Assembly: GCA_964036045.1 (NCBI GenBank)
Contig: OZ038379.1
Coordinates: 22,692,001 to 22,756,000 of the forward strand
Origin: Eutreptiella sp. 'Long Island Sound 2002'
Taxonomy: Eukaryota > Protista > Euglenida
DNA: 64,000 bases
Direction: 5' to 3'
Every line of letters starts with the position of its first letter. The first letter of the stretch is position 1. Under the pieces are notes generated by a model. That model did not search any database. It was not told the origin of the DNA and saw only the letters and a program-made list of their open reading frames with translations. Positions 38,426 through 48,093 of this stretch are shown in pieces. Made by a program: the position numbers and the translations under genes.

Positions 38426-41400
38426 ATGTTCCCGTCGACGCCCGCAACTCCTTACATGCAGCGCCCTCCTGTCCCCGGAGGCCCGCCTGCACCACACCCC
38501 GCGGGGTCCCCGGCTTTTGCCGCCCCCCCCCTCCCCCACTATACCCACACCCCATACGCGCCCCACCAACCGCTCGTGGAGGTTCACTCCCAGCCAGCGT
38601 ACCCCGCCTATTACCTGCGGGAGCCGCGGTATGGGCTTCCCCCGCCCCCCCGCCCGCCCTCGCCGCTCCCGACGGTACCGCCCCCGGACCACCGTGACCT
38701 GGAGTTGGCCTACCTACGGGGCCACGTGGCAGGCCTGGACCGCCGCACCGAGGGGCCTCCGCCCCCTAAGGAGGCGGCGCAGAGGGCGCCCCCGGCGCCG
38801 CAGGGCCCTGCCCCCGACGCGGTCGGCGAGGCGACGCCGGCACTGCTGCTGGCACCGGCGAGGGAGACGGAGCCCAGGCAGGACCGCCGGCCCCCGGCAC
38901 CTACGGAGCCGCCACGCCGGCCCCAATGCGCAACCTACCGGAGGTCCCGCTCCCCCAGACGGGACCTACGCGACGATCGCCGAGACCACGGCCGTACAAG
39001 CCCCGGTAGAGGAGGCCGCACGGCCCACCGCCGGCCCTACCGCTCCCCTGAGCGGTACTACCAGCGCCGGTCCGAGGAGCGCCCCTCCGGACACCGAGCT
39101 CCCGCCGCTAGAGGTAGAGACCATACCCCCGACCGCCGGGATAACCGCTCCCGTCGTGACCCGCCCGGATCAGCCCCCGGCCCGGGCCGGGAGCGACGAG
39201 ACCCCGACGACCGGCGCCGGTACCGCTCCCCCAGCCCGGATACCGCTAGACGCCTGAGGTATGATGCGCCAGATACGGGGCGCCGGCCGCAGTGGGAGCC
39301 CCGTACGGCTCCCGACGCCCAACCCCCGCATGTCCCGAGGGACAAGCCCCCACGCAAGCGGCAGCGCCATAACAAGGAAGGCAGACAGCCTGCGGCGCAG
39401 TCGCCCGCGGGCACCCTGCACAGGCTACCGGTGCACGCTCTGGCGGGGACCCAAACGACGCCGGGCCTCCTGGCCCCCCGTGCACAGCAGGCACGACTGC
39501 CACAGGACGGCGCCCCCCGCACGCCCCAGAAGCACCGTACCGGTGTCACGCAAACCACCCCGGGCCTCCGGGGCCCGGGCTACGCCTCCCCGAGCGGGGC
39601 AATGAAAGCCCCCCAGCTGCCCCGCGCCGCGGACCCTCCGACCGTCCTGCACATCCGGCGCCTCCCCACAGGGTGGTCCCGCCATCACCTGGCGGACCGT
39701 TTCATGTGGCTGGATGGGGCGGAGGGGGTGGCGGAGGCCTTTTATGGAGGAGAAAACCACGGGTACCTGACCTTCCGCGCCCACACACAGGCGCTGGCGG
39801 CGTGTGCGGTAGTCAGCGCTGCCCTGGGTACGGTAGCGCCCCCGCCCGGCCGCCTGCCGGCGGCAGTCCACTGTGTCAACCGCAGTGTCATCCGGGACCT
39901 CACCGTGCACACACAGCGGGACGCCGCGGGCGAGGAGCGGCACGACACGCCGTCCGCCGGGGCTGCCCCCCCGCGCATGGACCGCCCCTCCCTCACCGAG
40001 GATGACGTCCGGCGCCTCATAGCCGATGCCGTGGGCGGAACGCAGCAGGTGGTACATCCAACATCCACGGCCGCAGGAGCCCGCCCGGGCGCCCACAGCC
40101 GACGCGGTCGGTGGCGCCGGCCGCCCCCTACCCCGAGGCCCCCCTCCGGCACAACAGGCGCCCATCTCCCGGGAAAGAGACCCAGCGTTGCCCGGGGGCG
40201 GGGCAGCCCCTGAGCGAAGCCCGGAGGTCACCGCGGCTCGGGTGAGCCCGCCTGCGCGGCCGCGAGCCGCAGCCAAAGGCCGTACCAGCCAGCTTAGCCG
40301 GCGTATCCTGGCGGCTACCGGGACGCCTAGTGACCCCGGCCTACCGGCTGCCGGGCATGCCAGCGCAGGGCCCCCCCGGCCCGGCCCCTCGGATGTGGCA
40401 ACTGAAGGCGTGTCCCAGGACCTCTTGGGCGCAGATTGCCGGGAGGAGGGCCATCAGCAAGCCCTCGCCAGCGCCCCAGAGGCCCCTGCGGCCCGCCCCC
40501 AGGCGCCCGCTGGCAACCCCATGACCGCCCAGGCCCACGACGGTGCTGAGGCCTCAGCTCCCCCGACGGGGGGCCACCCCCCGGAGGGACCCGCCCTGGA
40601 TTGGTGTACAGTCTGTCGCTTCTGGCGCCCCAGCCCATGCGACCAGTGCCCCCCGCAGAGAGCCCCCCAGGAGGAAGACGAGGCTGCGGAGCTGGCCCCG
40701 GAAGGAGAACGGGAGCTAGGGCCCCGTGAGACCTCGCCCGCACTCGAAACTCCCACTTCGCACGCGGCGGATGACCCTCCGCCCACCCCCATCGATGTGG
40801 ATGCGTCCCAGGGCAGAGCCACCCAGCTGGCTGGCCTCCTGGATGATGAAGCGGGCGCCCTCAGCCCGCTGGAGCCCCTACCGCCGGCGGTAGAGTTGGA
40901 TGGCGACCCTGCACCGCCGGCAGCCGGCCGCGCCGACAGCCCGCCGGGCGAGCTGGGCCCGCACGAGTCCCGCCTGGCGGCGCTCATCGCCGATACTGCC
41001 CTGGAGGAGGCGAACCCCTGCAAGGCCCTGGACGTCGCTGTCTTCCTGGACAGCGAACGCCTGTCGGCGGTGGGACGCCGCATGCGGGCGGCGGGCCAGG
41101 ACACCACCCCCGTCCCCGGCCCCCATTCCCCGGAGGGAGACGGCCTCCCTCCCCTCCTGGCCCAGTATGCAAAGAGGACCCGCGAGCTTCTCCAGCTCGT
41201 GGGCTATACCCTGGGGGTCCCCTCCTTCTCCCTCTCCAGCTGGGAGGGAGATGCCATGCCGGCTCCTCACCCGCCGGGACTTGGGATCACGGTGTATTAC
41301 GTGATCGAGGGGAGGGTGCAGCTCCGCCTCCCCACCCCCGAGGGCGGCTCGCGCCCTGGGTGGTGGCTCCAGGCCATGGCATATGCGTATGCCTGGTCTG

Positions 41401-42025
41401 CCCCACCCCCGCCCCGGGCGGTCCCCCCGGATACCAGGGCCCTGGTGCTGATATGCCAGTGCCCGGTACATGTCCCCCGGGGCACGCCGGCCACCGCCCC
41501 CCCCCCGGTCCAAATCTGCGTCAAGCGCGGGGACCGGTACACCCCAGTCGACACGGCGAGCATGGACCTCGGGGACCACAGGGCCACCCTCACCCCACCC
41601 GGAGGCAACCCCCTGGCCATCGCTACGCCCATGGTGGCCAGGGCCACCTACGACAGGGCTCGGGGGGGACTCGTCATCGTCCCCTCGGCCCTGGGGGCCC
41701 AGCAGCTCCGCGACGCCAACTGGAAGGGATGGAGCGCCTCGTGGGTTAGCTACGCCCGGGCCCTCCAGCCGGCCAAGCCGGTCGGCTTCAAGGTCCTGGG
41801 GGCGCAGGCCCCGGCCCTACGAGACTGGGTGCTCCCCAGGCTCACGGGCGAACGGCCAGCGGGGACTCCCTGACCACGGTGTTTGGCCTCATCGGGCGTG
41901 ACCTGCGGGCAGCCCAGGAGGCAGCTGGCGGCTCGGCCACACACGCCGACCCCCAGGGCGGGCCCACTTCCTCAGAGCCGGACCCGGAGCCGGAGCACCC
42001 CACTCCCTCGCAATCCCAGAATTGA
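38426..42025 (+). pseudogene. LINE B ORF1 (~1190 aa restored): Pro-rich, RS/RD-rich, RRM-like domain, acidic linker, C-terminal globular domain
   Basis: RRSRSPRRDLRDDRR / YRSPER / YRSPSP tracts. RRM-like VLHIRRLP..WSRHHL..RF...HGYLTF (about 39640-39800). Frameshift from a 7-bp duplication at 40054-40067; probable 1-nt deletion in the G-run 41861-41864 (restores GDSLTTVFGLIGRDL... to TGA 42023-42025). Confidence 0.75.
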
Positions 42026-45000
42026 GGGCACCCCGGAGGACGTGCACGCTGTGGGGTACATGTGGCTCAACGTCCGGGGCCGGTACCTCCGGCAACGCCT
42101 CCTGGCGCAAGCCCTGCACATGGCAGCGCGCCGCCCTACCCTCCTCATCCTGGCTGAGGCCCAGTCCCGGGCAGGCCCCGAGGACCCCCCCTTCCAGGAC
42201 TACGCCCGTCACGTCGTGCTCCCCGCCCAAGGCAAGACGGGGGCGGGCCTGGAAGTATACGTCCGCACCGGGACAACCACCCGGGCTTCCCTCCTCTGGG
42301 GCGCGGAGGATGCCAACGCCCTCCTCATGGAGGTCCTCACCCCGTGGGGTCGGCATCATGTGCTGGCAGCCCATGCCCCCCACATCAGCATAGGCGTGGA
42401 GCCTTACGTGAGATGGTGGGCCGCCGTCTGGAGGGAGGTCACCTGCCTGGTCGACCCGACGACCGTCCTGGTTGTCACGGACACCAACTCGGCGGCCCGA
42501 CCGGCAGATAGAGGGACCCCGCGCCCCGAGGACACGGGCTACCGCACGTTCCTGAGGGCCTTCAACCTCAGGGACTTAGTGGACCTTCACCCGGTCCCGC
42601 AGGACACATACTCCTGCTTCCAGGGAGCCGCGCGCTCCCGCATCGACACAGCCGCCTGCCACAGCGAGGCGCAGTTCACCATCGCCTCGTACCACTACTG
42701 GGCGAGCACCCTCCTCTCGGACCACCACGTCCCCCTCCTTCTCACCGTCGCCTTCCCGGTGAACCGGCTGGACAAGCCCAGCCCCCATACGGTCTCCCGC
42801 ACCCCGGAGTACCACCTGGGCCCAGTGGCCCTGTCCCCGGCCGACACGGCCGATTTCCACAACTCAGTACTCCGCAGGAGAGCCGTGGACCCCCAGCTCG
42901 CCCCGAATCGGTGGCTGAAAGGCCTGCAAAGGGCCATCTACGATTGGGCCCACGCCACGGGCAGGGTCCGAGCCCTCCGCTTCCGGCAGTACCGCCTCAA
43001 GACGCGCCCGGCGGAGCGAGCTCCCCCCTCGCGGGCTCCCCAGCAGCCCTTCCCAGCGCGCAGCATGCTCCCCACGGTGGGGCGTTTTACAGTGATGGCC
43101 CAGAGCATATTGGGCACCTCAGTGACGGCGGGGCACGCCCTCAAGCGGAGCCTAGTGGCCTTGGGGGAAGCCCAGCGCCAGCAGAGCCTCCGGGGGGTGA
43201 AACGCAGGGCCCTCCGATGCAAGCAGGAAACCCTCAACTTGAAACGCACCCCGGAGCAGTGGAGGGAGGTGCAGCGTCGTAGCATGGGCCCCCCGCGCGA
43301 TGTCTCGGAAATCCCCCTGGACAGCAAGGCGCTCCTCAACCCCAGGGAGACGTTGTCCGCCCTGTACTTGAGCCGCCTACGGCTCCAGGGCCATAGCTAC
43401 CGGATCCGGGATGACCCCGACCGATGGGCCCACTTCCAGAGGTACCTGGGGCTCCTGCCGCAGCATGCCCCGCCAGCCCGCGGCGACTATGTCCAGCCCC
43501 GCCACCTCTGGGAGGTGCAGTCAGGGAAGGCCCGCGGCCCCGACCTCCGCCTACCCGAAGCGGACGTCTGCATCGATATAGCCTGGTAACGACACCTGAC
43601 GGAGGCGGACCAGAAGACCCTGTGCACCGTGGTGCGCAGCCCCCCAGTCAGCCGCACGGTGGGCAGGCGGGGGCGGGTTACCCTGCTCCTAAAAAACCCG
43701 GACCAGCCGGTCCAGGAGGCGAACCTCCGGGGGATAACCATCTCCTCCCACGTCTCCAAACTCGAGCCCACGGCCTTCTATGCCGTGGCGACAGCCGTCT
43801 ACGAGCGGGCCCTGGGGGGCCCCTGCCTAGTGGGGGGCATGCGGGGGATATCCCTCCAGGAGGTCGTCCGCACGGTGCACATGAAGCTGGACCTGGCCAG
43901 GCTTCAAAACCGGATAGTGGACGTCCTGATCACGGATCTCGCGAAATTCTTCGACGTGATCGCGCAGGACATTCACCCTATAGTGGGAGCCCGGGTGGGC
44001 CTGGGAGAGGCCGACCACCTCGCCACCCATACCGAGGGTTTCTCCTACACCCTGCCCTTGGGCCCCTGGCAGTCCCACACCCTGACGCAACTCCTGGGTA
44101 CGCCCCAGGGTACCGTCCAGGGGGTCCATGCGGGGGCGACGGCGGCGCTCCCTTTCTTGCGATACATGGACATCGCATACCGGTCCTCGGCGGTGGAGCC
44201 CTTCCGCTTCCCGGGACTCATGTGGGTGGACGACACGATCGTCCTCTTGGAGCGGGGCGATTCCCACCCCATACAGGGGGTCCTATTGGATCAGCGGGTA
44301 TACTACCAGGGAATCCTGCGGGTGGACGTCCCTGACCGCAAGATCCAGCACGGCTCCACGTCAGACCCGCGGCCCCTACGGTCGCCTACGCCAGCAGCCG
44401 TGGCCCGCCACCTAGGCCGCGCGTGGGTGACGAGTACCCCGGACCAGCGGCGGGAGGCACTGGCAGGGGCCCCGGAGATACAGCCCTCCAGGGTCCTCCG
44501 ATATATGGGAACCGACATTTACCTCCAGGGGGCGCCTACGGCCCCCCGCAACCTGCCGGAGGTCAGGGCGGAGCTCTGGACACAGCTCCGCCCCCAGCGG
44601 CTCTCCCCGGACGCGGCCATGATGGTACTCATGGCCAAGCTCCCGAGCAAGCTGCTCCCCCTGGCCAGCGTGTACCGCCCCACGGCCAAGGTACACGCGG
44701 CAAACGATGCTCTCATGGTGCGAGCATACAAGCACGTGACGGGCATCTCCCGCCACGCTCATACCGACGCGCTCTGGGGACCCTGGGAGCATGGGTGCCA
44801 GGGTCTCACTCGGTCGGAGCACTCGTGGCAGGCGGCGGTAGTTCGAGAGTGGGTTCGGCAGGGGGCCTGGGCCAAGCAGGAGTTCCGGGACTCCCAGGCC
44901 TACTCCCTGCAAACGCACCAGGCGCTCAGGGGGGGCTGCCCGGCGGTGCTTACCCCGGGGCAGTACACGCATCACCCCAAGTGCCCCCACCTCATAGCCA

Positions 45001-46654
45001 CGCTGCAGCGGGTCGTGGATGAGGTGGCTCTGCCCATGTGGATGCCGGGCCAGTGCTCAGGGACCACCCCCATCCTGGTCCGAGGTCCCGGTGGGCCGCG
45101 ATCGGCGGCAGCGGCGGCCCCTGCCCCCCGGGTGGAGGTGTACACGACTCTGTATGGCGCCGTCGCGCAGGTCGTCGTCCCCCCGACGGTGTACGAAACG
45201 GTACAGGCCCTGGGCTACCATCACCTCGGCGACCTCTACACAGAGAATCACCAGGTGCTACCGGAGCGAGCCCTGAAGAGACGAGCGCCAGCCCGCAAGG
45301 GGATCCCGGGGCTACGTGCATGGCTGGCCCGCCACGCTGCGGTACTAGTCCCGCTCCTGAGGGAACCCACGCCGCGATGGCAAGCGGCACCCAAGGACTG
45401 GGTCCCGGGGGCCGTGCCCACCTATCAGGCGGAAGTCATAGTGGGGGGCCGGGCGGCCAAAACCACCCGAATGGAGACGATATACCATAGGGGGCAGCCC
45501 CTCCGGATAACCGCGGCCCTGCAGGACACCATGGAGACCGCGGGCTGGGCGCCAGAACCCCGGGTATGCCAGCAGCCCCCGGGCACCCTGCCCAGCGACA
45601 CCAGGCTCCACCGCCTCCTGGTGGCCCTCCTGGATATCCAAGTGCAGGTGAATGCGCCACTGCACGCCCAGCTGTGGGGCGACCACCGGCAGGAGTCCCT
45701 GGCCCAGCTCCAGCGCACTGGGGTCAGGGCGCCCACCGTCGTGTGGACGACAGCCCCCCCGTCTGCCGCCTACTGGAACTGGGCCAGCACATCGCAGGCC
45801 CCTCTCGTGACGGTCACCTCGACGCTACCGCCGTTTCCGTGGATCGCCATAGCCCCGGCGGCGGTGGCGCGCTTCCAATATCCAGCGGAGTGCATGGCGC
45901 ACAAATGCCCGGGGCACCCGCACAAGGGGCCCCTCTATTACTCCCTCGATACGGTGGGGTCAGTGCCAGCGGAGCTTCACCAGGCCCTGCGCACCCACCT
46001 CAGGGAGCACCATGGGGACATGGCCCTCCTGGCGCCACACGGCCGGGCGACCAGCCCCCCGCGAGTGTTGGCCCCTGAGACTCGCCCGGGCGTCTGGTTC
46101 CATGACCTGCCTGCGCTGGCGACCCTCCGAGGCAGTGTCGTGGCGGTGGATGCAGGGGCCACGCAGGCGGGTATGGCCATGGCCGGGGTCGTCCAGAGCG
46201 GGCCTGGGGAGTATCAGGCCCAGGTGGCCTCAAGAGTGGGCACCTCCCAGGAGGGGGAGGCGATGGCCCTCCTCTCGTATGCCCGCCGGCTGGCGACACA
46301 GCCGGGGGTTTACTGGCTGGTGCCGGACTCGGAGGCAGCAGTGGGGGCCCTCCGCACGTACTAGGAAGGAGGGCACTGCGGAGATGGCATTAACCACCTC
46401 TACGCCACCGTCCTGGGGGGGCAGCGCCTCTCCCCGAGGTCTGCCATCAATGTGGTGACCACACCATCGCACTGGATCACGGACCTCAACGTCCGTGTGG
46501 ACGCAGCGACGCGGGAGCCGCCGGAGGTAGACCTCACGTGGCTCCTTAGGCGCCCCTACTCATTTATCCCCCCAGTGCCCTTCCGCGACCAGTGCCAGCT
46601 CTCCCCGACGGCGCTGAGTGACTGGTTGCAGGACCGGGCCTCCATACCGGCGCA

Positions 46655-47251
46655 CACGGGGGGGCGACTACAACCGGTCTTGATGCGACCCACCCCCCAA
46701 CTATCTTTCAAAACTCGCGGGGGGGGGGGGTCCAGCCGGGGGTCGGGGGGGGGGGGGGGTTCCTCCCGGGGGTCGGGGGGGGGGGTGTTCCTGCCGGGGG
46801 TCGGGAGGGGGGTGTTCCTGCCGGGGGTCGGGGGGGGGGTCTGGCCGGGGGTCGGGGGGGGGGTCTAGCCGGGGGTCATGGGGGTGTCCAGCCAGGGGTG
46901 AGGGGGGGGGGGGTGGTTAGGGTTAGGGTTAAGGTTAGCCCAGGGTTAGCCCTAGGGTTAGGGTTAGGGTTAGGGTTAGGGCTAGGGTTGTGGTTGCTGT
47001 TAGGGCCTGCAGCCCTCCTGTAGCCCTCCTTCCTTATTGTTTTAACACAAATATGATTTCTCTACAAAATTTTGAGTATTTTGAGTATAAACACATAGTA
47101 TGAAGAAAAAAATTGGCGCCTTTGGCGCCAGACAGTTTTCTCTAGAGACACTTGTTGGTGGCCGACCCGGCACCACTATCTTGCAAAACCCGGGGGGGGG
47201 GGGGGCTGGGGGGGGTCGCATACAAGGACCGGGCCCGGCCGCCCCCCCGTG
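46655..47251. mobile_element. 597-bp MITE carrying telomeric (TTAGGG)n-like repeats, inserted in LINE B ORF2
   Basis: Perfect 12-bp TIR CACGGGGGGGCG / CGCCCCCCCGTG, extending imperfectly to about 37 bp; 8-bp TSD CCGGCGCA at 46647-46654 and 47252-47259. Confidence 0.95.
46915..46990 (+). repeat. Interstitial telomere-type (TTAGGG)n tract with variants
   Basis: GGTTAGGGTTAGGGTTAAGGTTAGCCCAGGGTTAGCCCTAGGGTTAGGGTTAGGGTTAGGGTTAGGGCTAGGGTT; preceded by ~21-bp G-rich repeats at 46730-46870. Confidence 0.9.
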
Positions 47252-48093
47252 CCGGCGCAAGCCATCTACGAGGCCCGCTGGGGGGTAAACTTCATGCCAG
47301 GGGGGGGCCTCCCCCTGGACTGGTTCGACCACGACCAGCAGCGCCACATCACGGCGCATCGCATGGACAACGTCCCGACCATGGCCGTCCTAGCCCACCG
47401 TTCCTCCCACCGGGGCACGGTGCTGGATACAACGTGCCTCCTGTGCGGGACACAGCCCGAGACGGCGCCCCACCTGTGGGCCTGCTCGGCTCAATCGCAC
47501 GAGTGGGGGCCAGCCCGCCGGCGCCTCGCAGCGTGGCTCGACCAGAAGGTGGGGCCACGGGCGGCCCCAGTGCGTCACCAGCTGTGGGAACCGACTGTGC
47601 TGGGGCAGTGGGCGGCAGCCCTGCGGACCCCCTCCATGCAGCTGGCCCACCTGGAGTGTACGGGGCCCCACTCGCTGGGCACGGAGTTCCTCCGCCACGT
47701 CGTGGAGGAGTCCATACGGATCTGGTACGCCCACGCCAAGGCGCGTGCCACACTGCTGAAGGCCCGCCTGGGCCCGGGCAGCACGATGGCGTGGGCGTTG
47801 CAGGAGCTACGCCTGCACCAGCAAGCAGAAAGGGAAGGGGTGCAGCGGGAGCTCCTGGAATAAGCGCGGTCGCCAGAGGCGAACTCACCAGGTCTCCCCG
47901 ACTCCCCCTCCCCCTGCCGAGGCCTACACACTTACGCACAGCGCGCACACAACACACACAGCCCAGCCCGTTTACCTGTACCCGTGGGTAGACATCCCGG
48001 CCTTTTGCCTTTTGGTAACAGCGCCTTCGGCACACCACACCACACCACACCACACCACACCACACCACACCACACCACACCACACCACCACAC

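What the first reader, a model, noticed from the sequence alone, without database searches (positions are those of the whole stretch)
45585..45845. Degenerate PCIF1-like N6-adenine methyltransferase-type domain inserted between RT and RNase H in LINE B
Seen: LINE B has an extra ~300 aa between the RT thumb and RNase H that LINE A lacks (about 125 aa there). Within it, TLPSDTRLHRLLVALLDIQVQVNAPLH...VVWTTAPP...STSQAPLVTV lines up in order and near spacing with the PCIF1/CAPAM methyltransferase core as I recall it (ALP..VFEALHRLFGVSFECFASPLN...SFEANPPF...ESSPEPLSFIV). The NPPF catalytic motif is eroded to TAPP. Inference: these LINEs carry a captured adenine-MTase fold, probably catalytically altered, that could bind or cap-modify their own RNA or read the target DNA.
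Basis: partly seen in the sequence, partly recalled or inferred. Interest (0 to 1): 0.85.

Follow-up and report, generated by a model that had tools for sequence, protein, structure and literature searches.

The report
Possible dead methyltransferase-like domain in LINE
A recently active, very divergent LINE retrotransposon carries a conserved ~190-residue domain between its reverse transcriptase and RNase H; its predicted fold weakly resembles the PCIF1/CAPAM cap adenosine methyltransferase, but the catalytic motif is missing in every relative, so it is probably a non-catalytic nucleic-acid-handling module.

Summary
The stretch is the middle of a ~190-aa domain (about 45470-46030). Purifying selection acts on it (dN/dS 0.2-0.3; RT 0.17-0.19). 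It is present in over 300 fragments of this LINE family, including relatives only 23-25% identical.

Sequence and profile tests against PCIF1 are all negative: Pfam, PDB profile search, an HMM against shuffles, and hhalign at 0.16% probability. These methods also miss this LINE's own RT, endonuclease and RNase H, so they have little power here.

No family member has (D/N)PP(F/Y/W). Only one proline of "TAPP" is invariant.

Verdict: partly supported. It is probably a methyltransferase-like pseudo-enzyme domain acting as a connection or binding module (confidence about 0.5). It is not an active N6-methyltransferase. PCIF1 ancestry is unproven.

The parts
41883..43589 (+). N-terminal part of LINE B ORF2 (endonuclease region), closed in this copy by a private stop at 43590-43592
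   Evidence: Translation. Other copies read Y at the stop. There is no Pfam hit. Language-model features of the intact copy P0004 point to Exo_endo_phos + RVT_1 clusters.
43593..44789 (+). Reverse transcriptase palm/fingers and thumb, with motifs ITDLAKFFD, GTPQGT, WVDD and RYMGTDIY
   Evidence: The motifs were read directly from the translation. dN/dS is 0.17-0.19 against older subfamily copies. Pfam and PDB sequence searches do not detect it.
44790..45431 (+). Upstream half of the RT-to-RNase H linker: long helices plus a small hairpin-and-helix domain at about 45072-45389
45432..46064 (+). Conserved alpha/beta domain predicted as a class I methyltransferase-like fold; structured core about 45471-46031
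   Evidence: AF2 model m5bd3c4ae61b6 has pLDDT 65.9 and pTM 0.64. PCIF1 and RlmJ-type methyltransferases are the top structural matches. More than 300 family fragments were found. dN/dS is 0.2-0.3.
45585..45845 (+).
45747..45764 (+). Loop TTAPPS after strand TVVW, at the place where a class I methyltransferase would carry motif IV
   Evidence: Of 35 family members covering the site, none has [DNS]PP[YFW]. The consensus is W-[LMT]-[ST]-[AG]-[PQ]-P-[TA]. Divergent relatives read FAQEPT, SAHEPT, SDEGPT and FRIAPT, and only P110 is invariant. Reads from other runs change only S111 to T.
45891..45911 (+). Invariant C154-x2-H157-x-C159-P160 loop, a possible zinc site together with conserved C46 (45567-45569). 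By order of secondary-structure elements it sits roughly where PCIF1 has its substrate-binding loop.
   Evidence: These residues are invariant across relatives 23-25% identical. Single-member weak zinc-finger Pfam hits were seen. The position relative to PCIF1 is an inference from element order.
46143..46654 (+). RNase H-like domain (VDAG...EGEAMAL...PDSEAAV...SHW..DLNVRVDAAT), cut by a private TAG at 46362-46364 and then by an insertion
   Evidence: The motif pattern was read from the alignment with intact copies. All other runs read CAG at 46362. The domain is not confirmed by Pfam or PDB sequence search.
46655..47251 (.). Foreign insertion (G-runs, TTAGGG-like repeats, AT-rich core) that interrupts the ORF2 C-terminal region of this copy
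   Evidence: Sequence. Intact copies run straight through this point.
47252..47863 (+). ORF2 C-terminal region with the CCHC motif CLLCGTQPETAPHLWAC (47435-47485)
   Evidence: There is a weak zf-RVT hit in relative P0013.
48033..48093 (+). (CACCA/CACAC)n 3' tail of the element
   Evidence: Sequence.

Best explanation
The stretch is the centre of a ~190-residue, selectively maintained alpha/beta domain. This domain belongs to one highly divergent family of endonuclease-type LINEs and sits between an upstream helical linker and the RNase H. Its most likely fold is a trimmed class I (Rossmann-type) SAM-methyltransferase fold, closest to the PCIF1/CAPAM and RlmJ group of adenine-N6 methyltransferases. 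It lacks PCIF1's helical and WW domains and the catalytic (D/N)PP(F/Y/W) loop. It therefore most likely works as a pseudo-enzyme. I infer that it acts as a rigid connection module that spaces RNase H from the polymerase site, and that it grips the RNA template or the RNA:DNA hybrid. The grip would use the former substrate groove, a cluster of invariant aromatic residues (W105, Y114, W115, W137) and an invariant Cys/His loop that may hold zinc. Shown: the domain exists, it is conserved and under purifying selection, motif IV is absent, and the model is methyltransferase-like. Inferred: that the model is correct, ancestry from a PCIF1-type enzyme, and the binding and positioning role.
Confidence: 0.5

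Rival explanations
1. It is a lineage-specific connection domain with no methyltransferase ancestry. On this view it is a generic, possibly zinc-stabilised alpha/beta module. The AF2 model is either wrong in its global packing or only convergently Rossmann-like, and the PCIF1 resemblance comes from chance local sequence similarity carried into the model and into Foldseek's amino-acid term.
For: All sequence and profile tests are null. The letters that suggested PCIF1 are not conserved in divergent relatives. Structural scores lie below the tool's stated noise level. Four of the five AF2 models were poor. The conserved C46/C154/H157/C159 set has no counterpart in PCIF1.
Against: VIA uses structure only and still ranks PCIF1 and RlmJ-type enzymes first among 48,161 chains, and the top list is almost purely class I methyltransferases. 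The negative profile tests have little power here, since they also miss the RT-to-RT homology between LINE A and LINE B and the RT, endonuclease and RNase H of LINE B.
Confidence: 0.38
2. It is an active adenine methyltransferase with a non-canonical catalytic loop that methylates the element's RNA, its cap-adjacent base or the target DNA.
For: The fold resemblance is to N6-adenine methyltransferases. The segment at the motif I position (D56, R58, R61, N74, A75) and an aromatic cluster near the loop are conserved.
Against: No member has the D/N or the aromatic residue of motif IV, and only one proline is invariant. The equivalent substitutions abolish PCIF1 activity. No glycine-rich or PCIF1-type SAM loop is conserved in divergent relatives. 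PCIF1's cap-binding helical domain is absent.
Confidence: 0.04
3. It is a decayed, functionless spacer, or a degenerate second RNase H like the retroviral connection domain.
For: Retroviral RTs show that a connection domain can be a dead RNase H (established knowledge). The top AFDB hit is named as an RNase H type-1 domain-containing protein.
Against: dN/dS of 0.2-0.3 and invariant residues across relatives 23-25% identical exclude a neutral spacer. No RNase H or RT structure appears in the top 50 of either PDB search, although such structures are abundant there. The AFDB hit aligns residues 214-424 of a 533-aa protein, which is more likely the region upstream of its RNase H.
Confidence: 0.03

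Closest known systems
PCIF1/CAPAM methyltransferase domain (PDB 6IRV-6IS0; Pfam PF12237)
   Same: It is the best or joint-best structural match of the model in four searches. The order of elements is the same: helix, strand, loop, strand, catalytic-position loop, helix, strand. PCIF1 acts on single-stranded RNA and RNA/DNA hybrids.
   Different: There is no detectable sequence or profile similarity. NPPF is absent family-wide. There is no helical cap-binding domain and no WW domain. The LINE domain is about 35 residues shorter. It has a Cys/His loop that PCIF1 lacks. It is embedded in a LINE ORF2 between RT and RNase H.
RlmJ / DUF519 23S rRNA m6A methyltransferases (PDB 2OO3, 6QE5)
   Different: RlmJ has DPPY and binds SAM, is bacterial, and has a helical subdomain. 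No sequence similarity was detected.
Catalytically dead methyltransferase-fold partners (METTL14, DNMT3L, TRM6)
   Same: They keep a methyltransferase fold but have lost the catalytic motif, and they serve as a nucleic-acid or partner-binding scaffold. DNMT3L and TRM6 appear among the weak Foldseek hits.
   Different: They are stand-alone cellular proteins that pair with an active paralogue. No active partner is evident in this LINE.
Methyltransferase-like domain of DIRS-type retrotransposons
   Same: It is a precedent for an adenine-methyltransferase-like domain next to RT/RNase H in a retroelement (established knowledge). One Tyr-recombinase protein appears at AFDB rank 26.
   Different: DIRS elements are tyrosine-recombinase retroelements, and their domain is Dam-like and follows the RNase H. 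No comparison could be run here.
Retroviral connection domain / L1 ORF2p wrist
   Same: They occupy the same place in the polyprotein, between the thumb and the next module, and have the same presumed job of spacing and holding the template-primer duplex.
   Different: The fold differs. No RT, L1 ORF2p or R2 chain appears among the structural matches.

Membership tests
PCIF1/CAPAM family (Pfam PF12237 PCIF1_WW) | Significant match to the family profile or to PCIF1 sequences | tested here: not met
   No Pfam hit at E of 1 or less for the window protein, or at E of 10 or less for any of 67 family members. PDB profile searches found nothing at E of 10 or less. The HMM did no better than shuffles. 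hhalign against an 18-sequence PCIF1 alignment gave 0.16% probability. The power of these tests is low here.
PCIF1/CAPAM family (Pfam PF12237 PCIF1_WW) | Class I Rossmann methyltransferase fold that superposes on the PCIF1 methyltransferase domain | tested here: inconclusive
   [not shown]
PCIF1/CAPAM family (Pfam PF12237 PCIF1_WW) | Catalytic NPPF loop (N553-F556 in human) | tested here: not met
   The window reads TTAPPS. None of the 35 members covering the site, nor any of 4 divergent relatives, has [DNS]PP[YFW].
PCIF1/CAPAM family (Pfam PF12237 PCIF1_WW) | Helical (cap-binding) domain inserted in the methyltransferase domain, and an N-terminal WW domain | tested here: not met
   The 145 aligned model residues span human residues 165-668, so the helical domain has no counterpart in the model. 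There is no WW hit in Pfam.
PCIF1/CAPAM family (Pfam PF12237 PCIF1_WW) | Binds SAM and methylates cap-adjacent Am | not testable with these tools
   This needs biochemistry.
Adenine-N6 methyltransferases in general | Motif IV (D/N)PP(Y/F/W) following strand beta-4 | tested here: not met
   Only P110 is invariant.
Endonuclease-type LINE (non-LTR retrotransposon) ORF2 | RT motifs A-E in one ORF with an N-terminal endonuclease region, many near-identical genomic copies, and a simple-repeat 3' tail | tested here: met
   RT motifs were read. Copies 97-98% identical form clusters of 119 and 268 member sequences. Language-model features match RVT_1 + Exo_endo_phos clusters at 0.91-0.92. The tail is visible at 48033-48093. 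Pfam itself does not detect the RT or the endonuclease.
Endonuclease-type LINE (non-LTR retrotransposon) ORF2 | RNase H domain with the D-E-D-D catalytic pattern downstream of the linker | tested here: inconclusive
   The pattern is visible by eye in intact copies, but there is no Pfam or PDB sequence hit.

The most novel reading that the evidence does not exclude
A LINE lineage of a GC-rich estuarine protist captured the catalytic core of a PCIF1/CAPAM-type cap adenosine methyltransferase. It then lost the helical domain and the NPPF loop and gained a Cys/His loop. It now uses the dead enzyme as an RNA 5'-end or RNA:DNA-hybrid clamp between RT and RNase H. First-stage notes flag similar PCIF1-like segments in Penelope-like and other elements of the same genome (untested). 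If those hold, co-option of this fold by retroelements could be recurrent.
Probability: 0.3. Interest if true: 0.75.

Novelty: new variant of a known kind. Interest (0 to 1): 0.55.

Why it matters
LINE ORF2 proteins are usually described as endonuclease, RT and, in some clades, RNase H plus a zinc knuckle. A conserved, selected extra domain with a methyltransferase-type fold between RT and RNase H would be a new architectural element. It would add a case of an RNA-modification enzyme fold being recycled as a non-catalytic part of a retrotransposition machine. It would also give a concrete target for asking how RNase H is positioned in LINEs that carry one. I found no paper describing a PCIF1-like domain in non-LTR elements in the searchable library. 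The case also carries a practical lesson. In this very divergent, GC-rich family, standard profile tools miss even the RT, so only structure-level evidence could reveal such domains.

Tried and rejected
- Pfam and NCBIfam on all pieces of LINE B and on intact copies gave nothing, not even RVT_1.
- PDB sequence and profile searches with the linker, the sub-domain, full-length P0004 and the RNase H part gave nothing relevant.
- The language-model atlas on the linker and on the sub-domain gave no lead.
- The ESM Atlas shape search was uninformative.
- The first AF2 run on the whole 451-aa linker was too poor to search (pLDDT 54).
- I asked whether other copies keep NPPF or DPPY. They do not.
- I tested LINE A's shorter linker for a reduced version of the domain. 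No similarity was found, though this test has low power.
- I fetched real PCIF1 sequences and ran a profile-profile comparison. It was not significant, and its best local alignment is in a different register, with LINE residues 70-119 against PCIF1 beta6-loop-beta7, "QVVVPAFEH...TVVVWLQN..YQRW".
- The degenerate-RNase-H idea was rejected because no RNase H-like structural matches appeared.

Full report
**What is in the window.** It lies in a long frame, 41883-46364, that reads as a LINE ORF2. This has an N-terminal endonuclease region and RT motifs (ITDLAKFFD, GTPQGT, WVDD, RYMGTDIY). A long linker follows, then an RNase H-like segment that starts at VVAVDAG.

This copy is dead but young. It has in-frame stops at 43590 and 46362, where other copies read Y and Q, and all other sequencing runs read CAG at 46362. 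A foreign insertion at 46655-47251 splits the C-terminal region. That region then continues to a CCHC motif and a (CACCA)n tail. Other copies are 97-98% identical and numerous, forming clusters of 119 and 268 member sequences.

From RT motif E to the RNase H start is about 550 aa in LINE B and about 260 aa in LINE A. The "extra ~300 aa" is therefore correct.

**The linker is a real, selected protein region.**
- A profile of the 451-aa linker, searched exhaustively against 1.84 billion representatives, found 310 proteins. All 150 listed are short fragments of this same LINE family.
- A later word-based profile search found 189 more, all unnamed ENA gene calls.
- Members from other samples are only 23-25% identical, yet they align over nearly the whole sub-domain and keep 17 invariant positions.
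- Contigs from estuary metatranscriptomes hold the region. This shows presence in RNA libraries, not transcription.

The quoted strings hit human PCIF1 (6irv_A) and zebrafish PCIF1 exactly. An X-padded query made the tool print human residues 493-583. N553 served as the anchor. The motif order is the same in both proteins, and the spacings are:

| Interval | PCIF1 | LINE |
|---|---|---|
| LP to PL(N/H) | 25 | 26 |
| PLx to PP | 37 | 31 |
| PP to PL | 23 | 14 |

**Sequence-level tests are all negative.**
- Pfam gives nothing for the window protein at E of 1 or less.
- Pfam gives no methyltransferase family for any of 67 family members at E of 10 or less.
- PDB profile searches give nothing.
- The family HMM scores -2.6 bits against the PCIF1 segment, and 277 of 2000 shuffles do as well.
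- hhalign against that segment gives P 0.32.
- I fetched genuine PCIF1 genes from metagenome contigs and their relatives and built an 18-sequence PCIF1 alignment. The profile-profile comparison gave 0.16% probability, E 0.37, and its best local alignment is in a different register.

**These negatives carry little weight.** The same family's RT, endonuclease and RNase H are invisible to Pfam and to PDB sequence search. hhalign also fails to find the certain RT-to-RT homology between LINE B and LINE A.

**The catalytic motif.** Of 35 family members covering the site, none has [DNS]PP[YFW]. The consensus is W-[LMT]-[ST]-[AG]-[PQ]-P-[TA]-x-A-Y-W-x-W. The four divergent relatives read FAQEPT, SAHEPT, SDEGPT and FRIAPT, so only the second proline is invariant. 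TAPP is therefore not a recent erosion of NPPF. If the domain descends from a methyltransferase, the motif was lost before these subfamilies split.

Engineered NPPF-to-APPA and NPPF-to-SPPG mutants of PCIF1 are dead. What is conserved is D56, R58, R61, V64, L66, N74, A75, T102, W105, P110, Y114, W115, W137, I140, A144, Y150, C154, H157, C159, P160, L190 and E192, plus C46.

**Structure prediction.** The 451-aa linker folded poorly (pLDDT 54), and only an upstream small domain came out confident. Searches with that model gave nothing.

The 211-aa sub-domain (45432-46064), with a 78-row alignment, gave one model with pLDDT 65.9 and pTM 0.64. The other four models scored 49-54.

The better model gave these matches:

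| Search | Result |
|---|---|
| Foldseek vs PDB | Rank 1 is 6irv_A, human PCIF1 (E 0.045); rank 3 is 6irw_B |
| AFDB clusters | 9 of the top 22 are PCIF1 family; rank 1 is an "RNase H type-1 domain" protein aligned over residues 214-424 of 533 |
| Swiss-Prot AFDB | Rank 1 is zebrafish PCIF1 |

The aligned ranges are informative. Model 45-193 pairs with zebrafish 490-673. The human alignment spans residues 165-668 with only 145 aligned residues, so the helical domain has no counterpart in the model.

**Weighing the evidence.**
- PCIF1-family hits are not independent of one another.
- The model is only middling in confidence.
- Against that, the top of an unbiased structural ranking is almost purely methyltransferase fold.

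I therefore put about 0.6 on the domain having a class I methyltransferase-like fold, about 0.3-0.35 on real descent from a PCIF1-type enzyme, and under 0.05 on catalytic activity.

**Proposed mechanism (inferred).** The domain is a pseudo-enzyme that serves as the connection between polymerase and RNase H. It would hold the template RNA or the RNA:DNA hybrid in the former substrate groove. PCIF1 itself accepts ssRNA, hybrids and ssDNA. The invariant aromatic cluster and the invariant C-x2-H-x-C-P loop are the likely contact or stabilising elements. With C46, that loop may bind zinc. By element order, the loop lies roughly where PCIF1 has its substrate-binding loop.

**Literature and earlier notes.** I found no paper in the searchable library describing a PCIF1-like domain in LINEs. 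Other first-stage notes flag PCIF1-like segments in other retroelements of this genome. I did not test them, and they are not independent support.

Noticed in passing
[not shown]
   Followed up: partly
window 41883-46364 and intact copies P0001-P0004: Pfam, NCBIfam and PDB sequence searches detect none of the RT, endonuclease or RNase H of LINE B. hhalign also fails to link the LINE B and LINE A RTs. This is an unusually divergent LINE lineage, and standard annotation would miss it.
   Followed up: partly
window 46655-47251: A foreign insertion carries long G-runs, repeated GGGGTC-type units, TTAGGG-like telomeric repeats and an AT-rich core. It splits the ORF2 C-terminal region of this copy, and the flanks rejoin exactly as in intact copies.
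   Followed up: no
window 43590-43592 and 46362-46364: Both in-frame stops of this copy are private. Other copies read Y and Q, and contigs of four other runs read CAG at 46362.
   Followed up: yes
window 45639-45788 against PCIF1 beta6-loop-beta7: The best profile-profile local alignment pairs QVQVNAPLH...TVVW...YWNW with PCIF1 QVVVPAFEH...T(V/I)VVW...YQRW. Spacing agrees within one residue (32 against 31, and 12 against 11). The alignment is not significant (E 0.37), and it is incompatible with the structural alignment.
   Followed up: partly
P0003 (locus not fetched): One gene model fuses a TRIP13 N-terminal domain and a run of HTTP-type repeats to the LINE RT. This is probably a LINE inserted in or next to a host gene and merged by the gene caller.
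   Followed up: no
L002, L003 and proteins P0113, P0379, P0382, P0385: A second subfamily of the same linker plus RNase H module, 23-25% identical, occurs on short contigs of other ENA samples (ERZ28668930 and ERZ28668932). The module is therefore not confined to one genome.
   Followed up: partly
window 40026-41873: The upstream ORF is proline/alanine-rich, with a CTVC...C..C cysteine cluster and a structured-looking C-terminal part just before the endonuclease. It has no Pfam hit.
   Followed up: no
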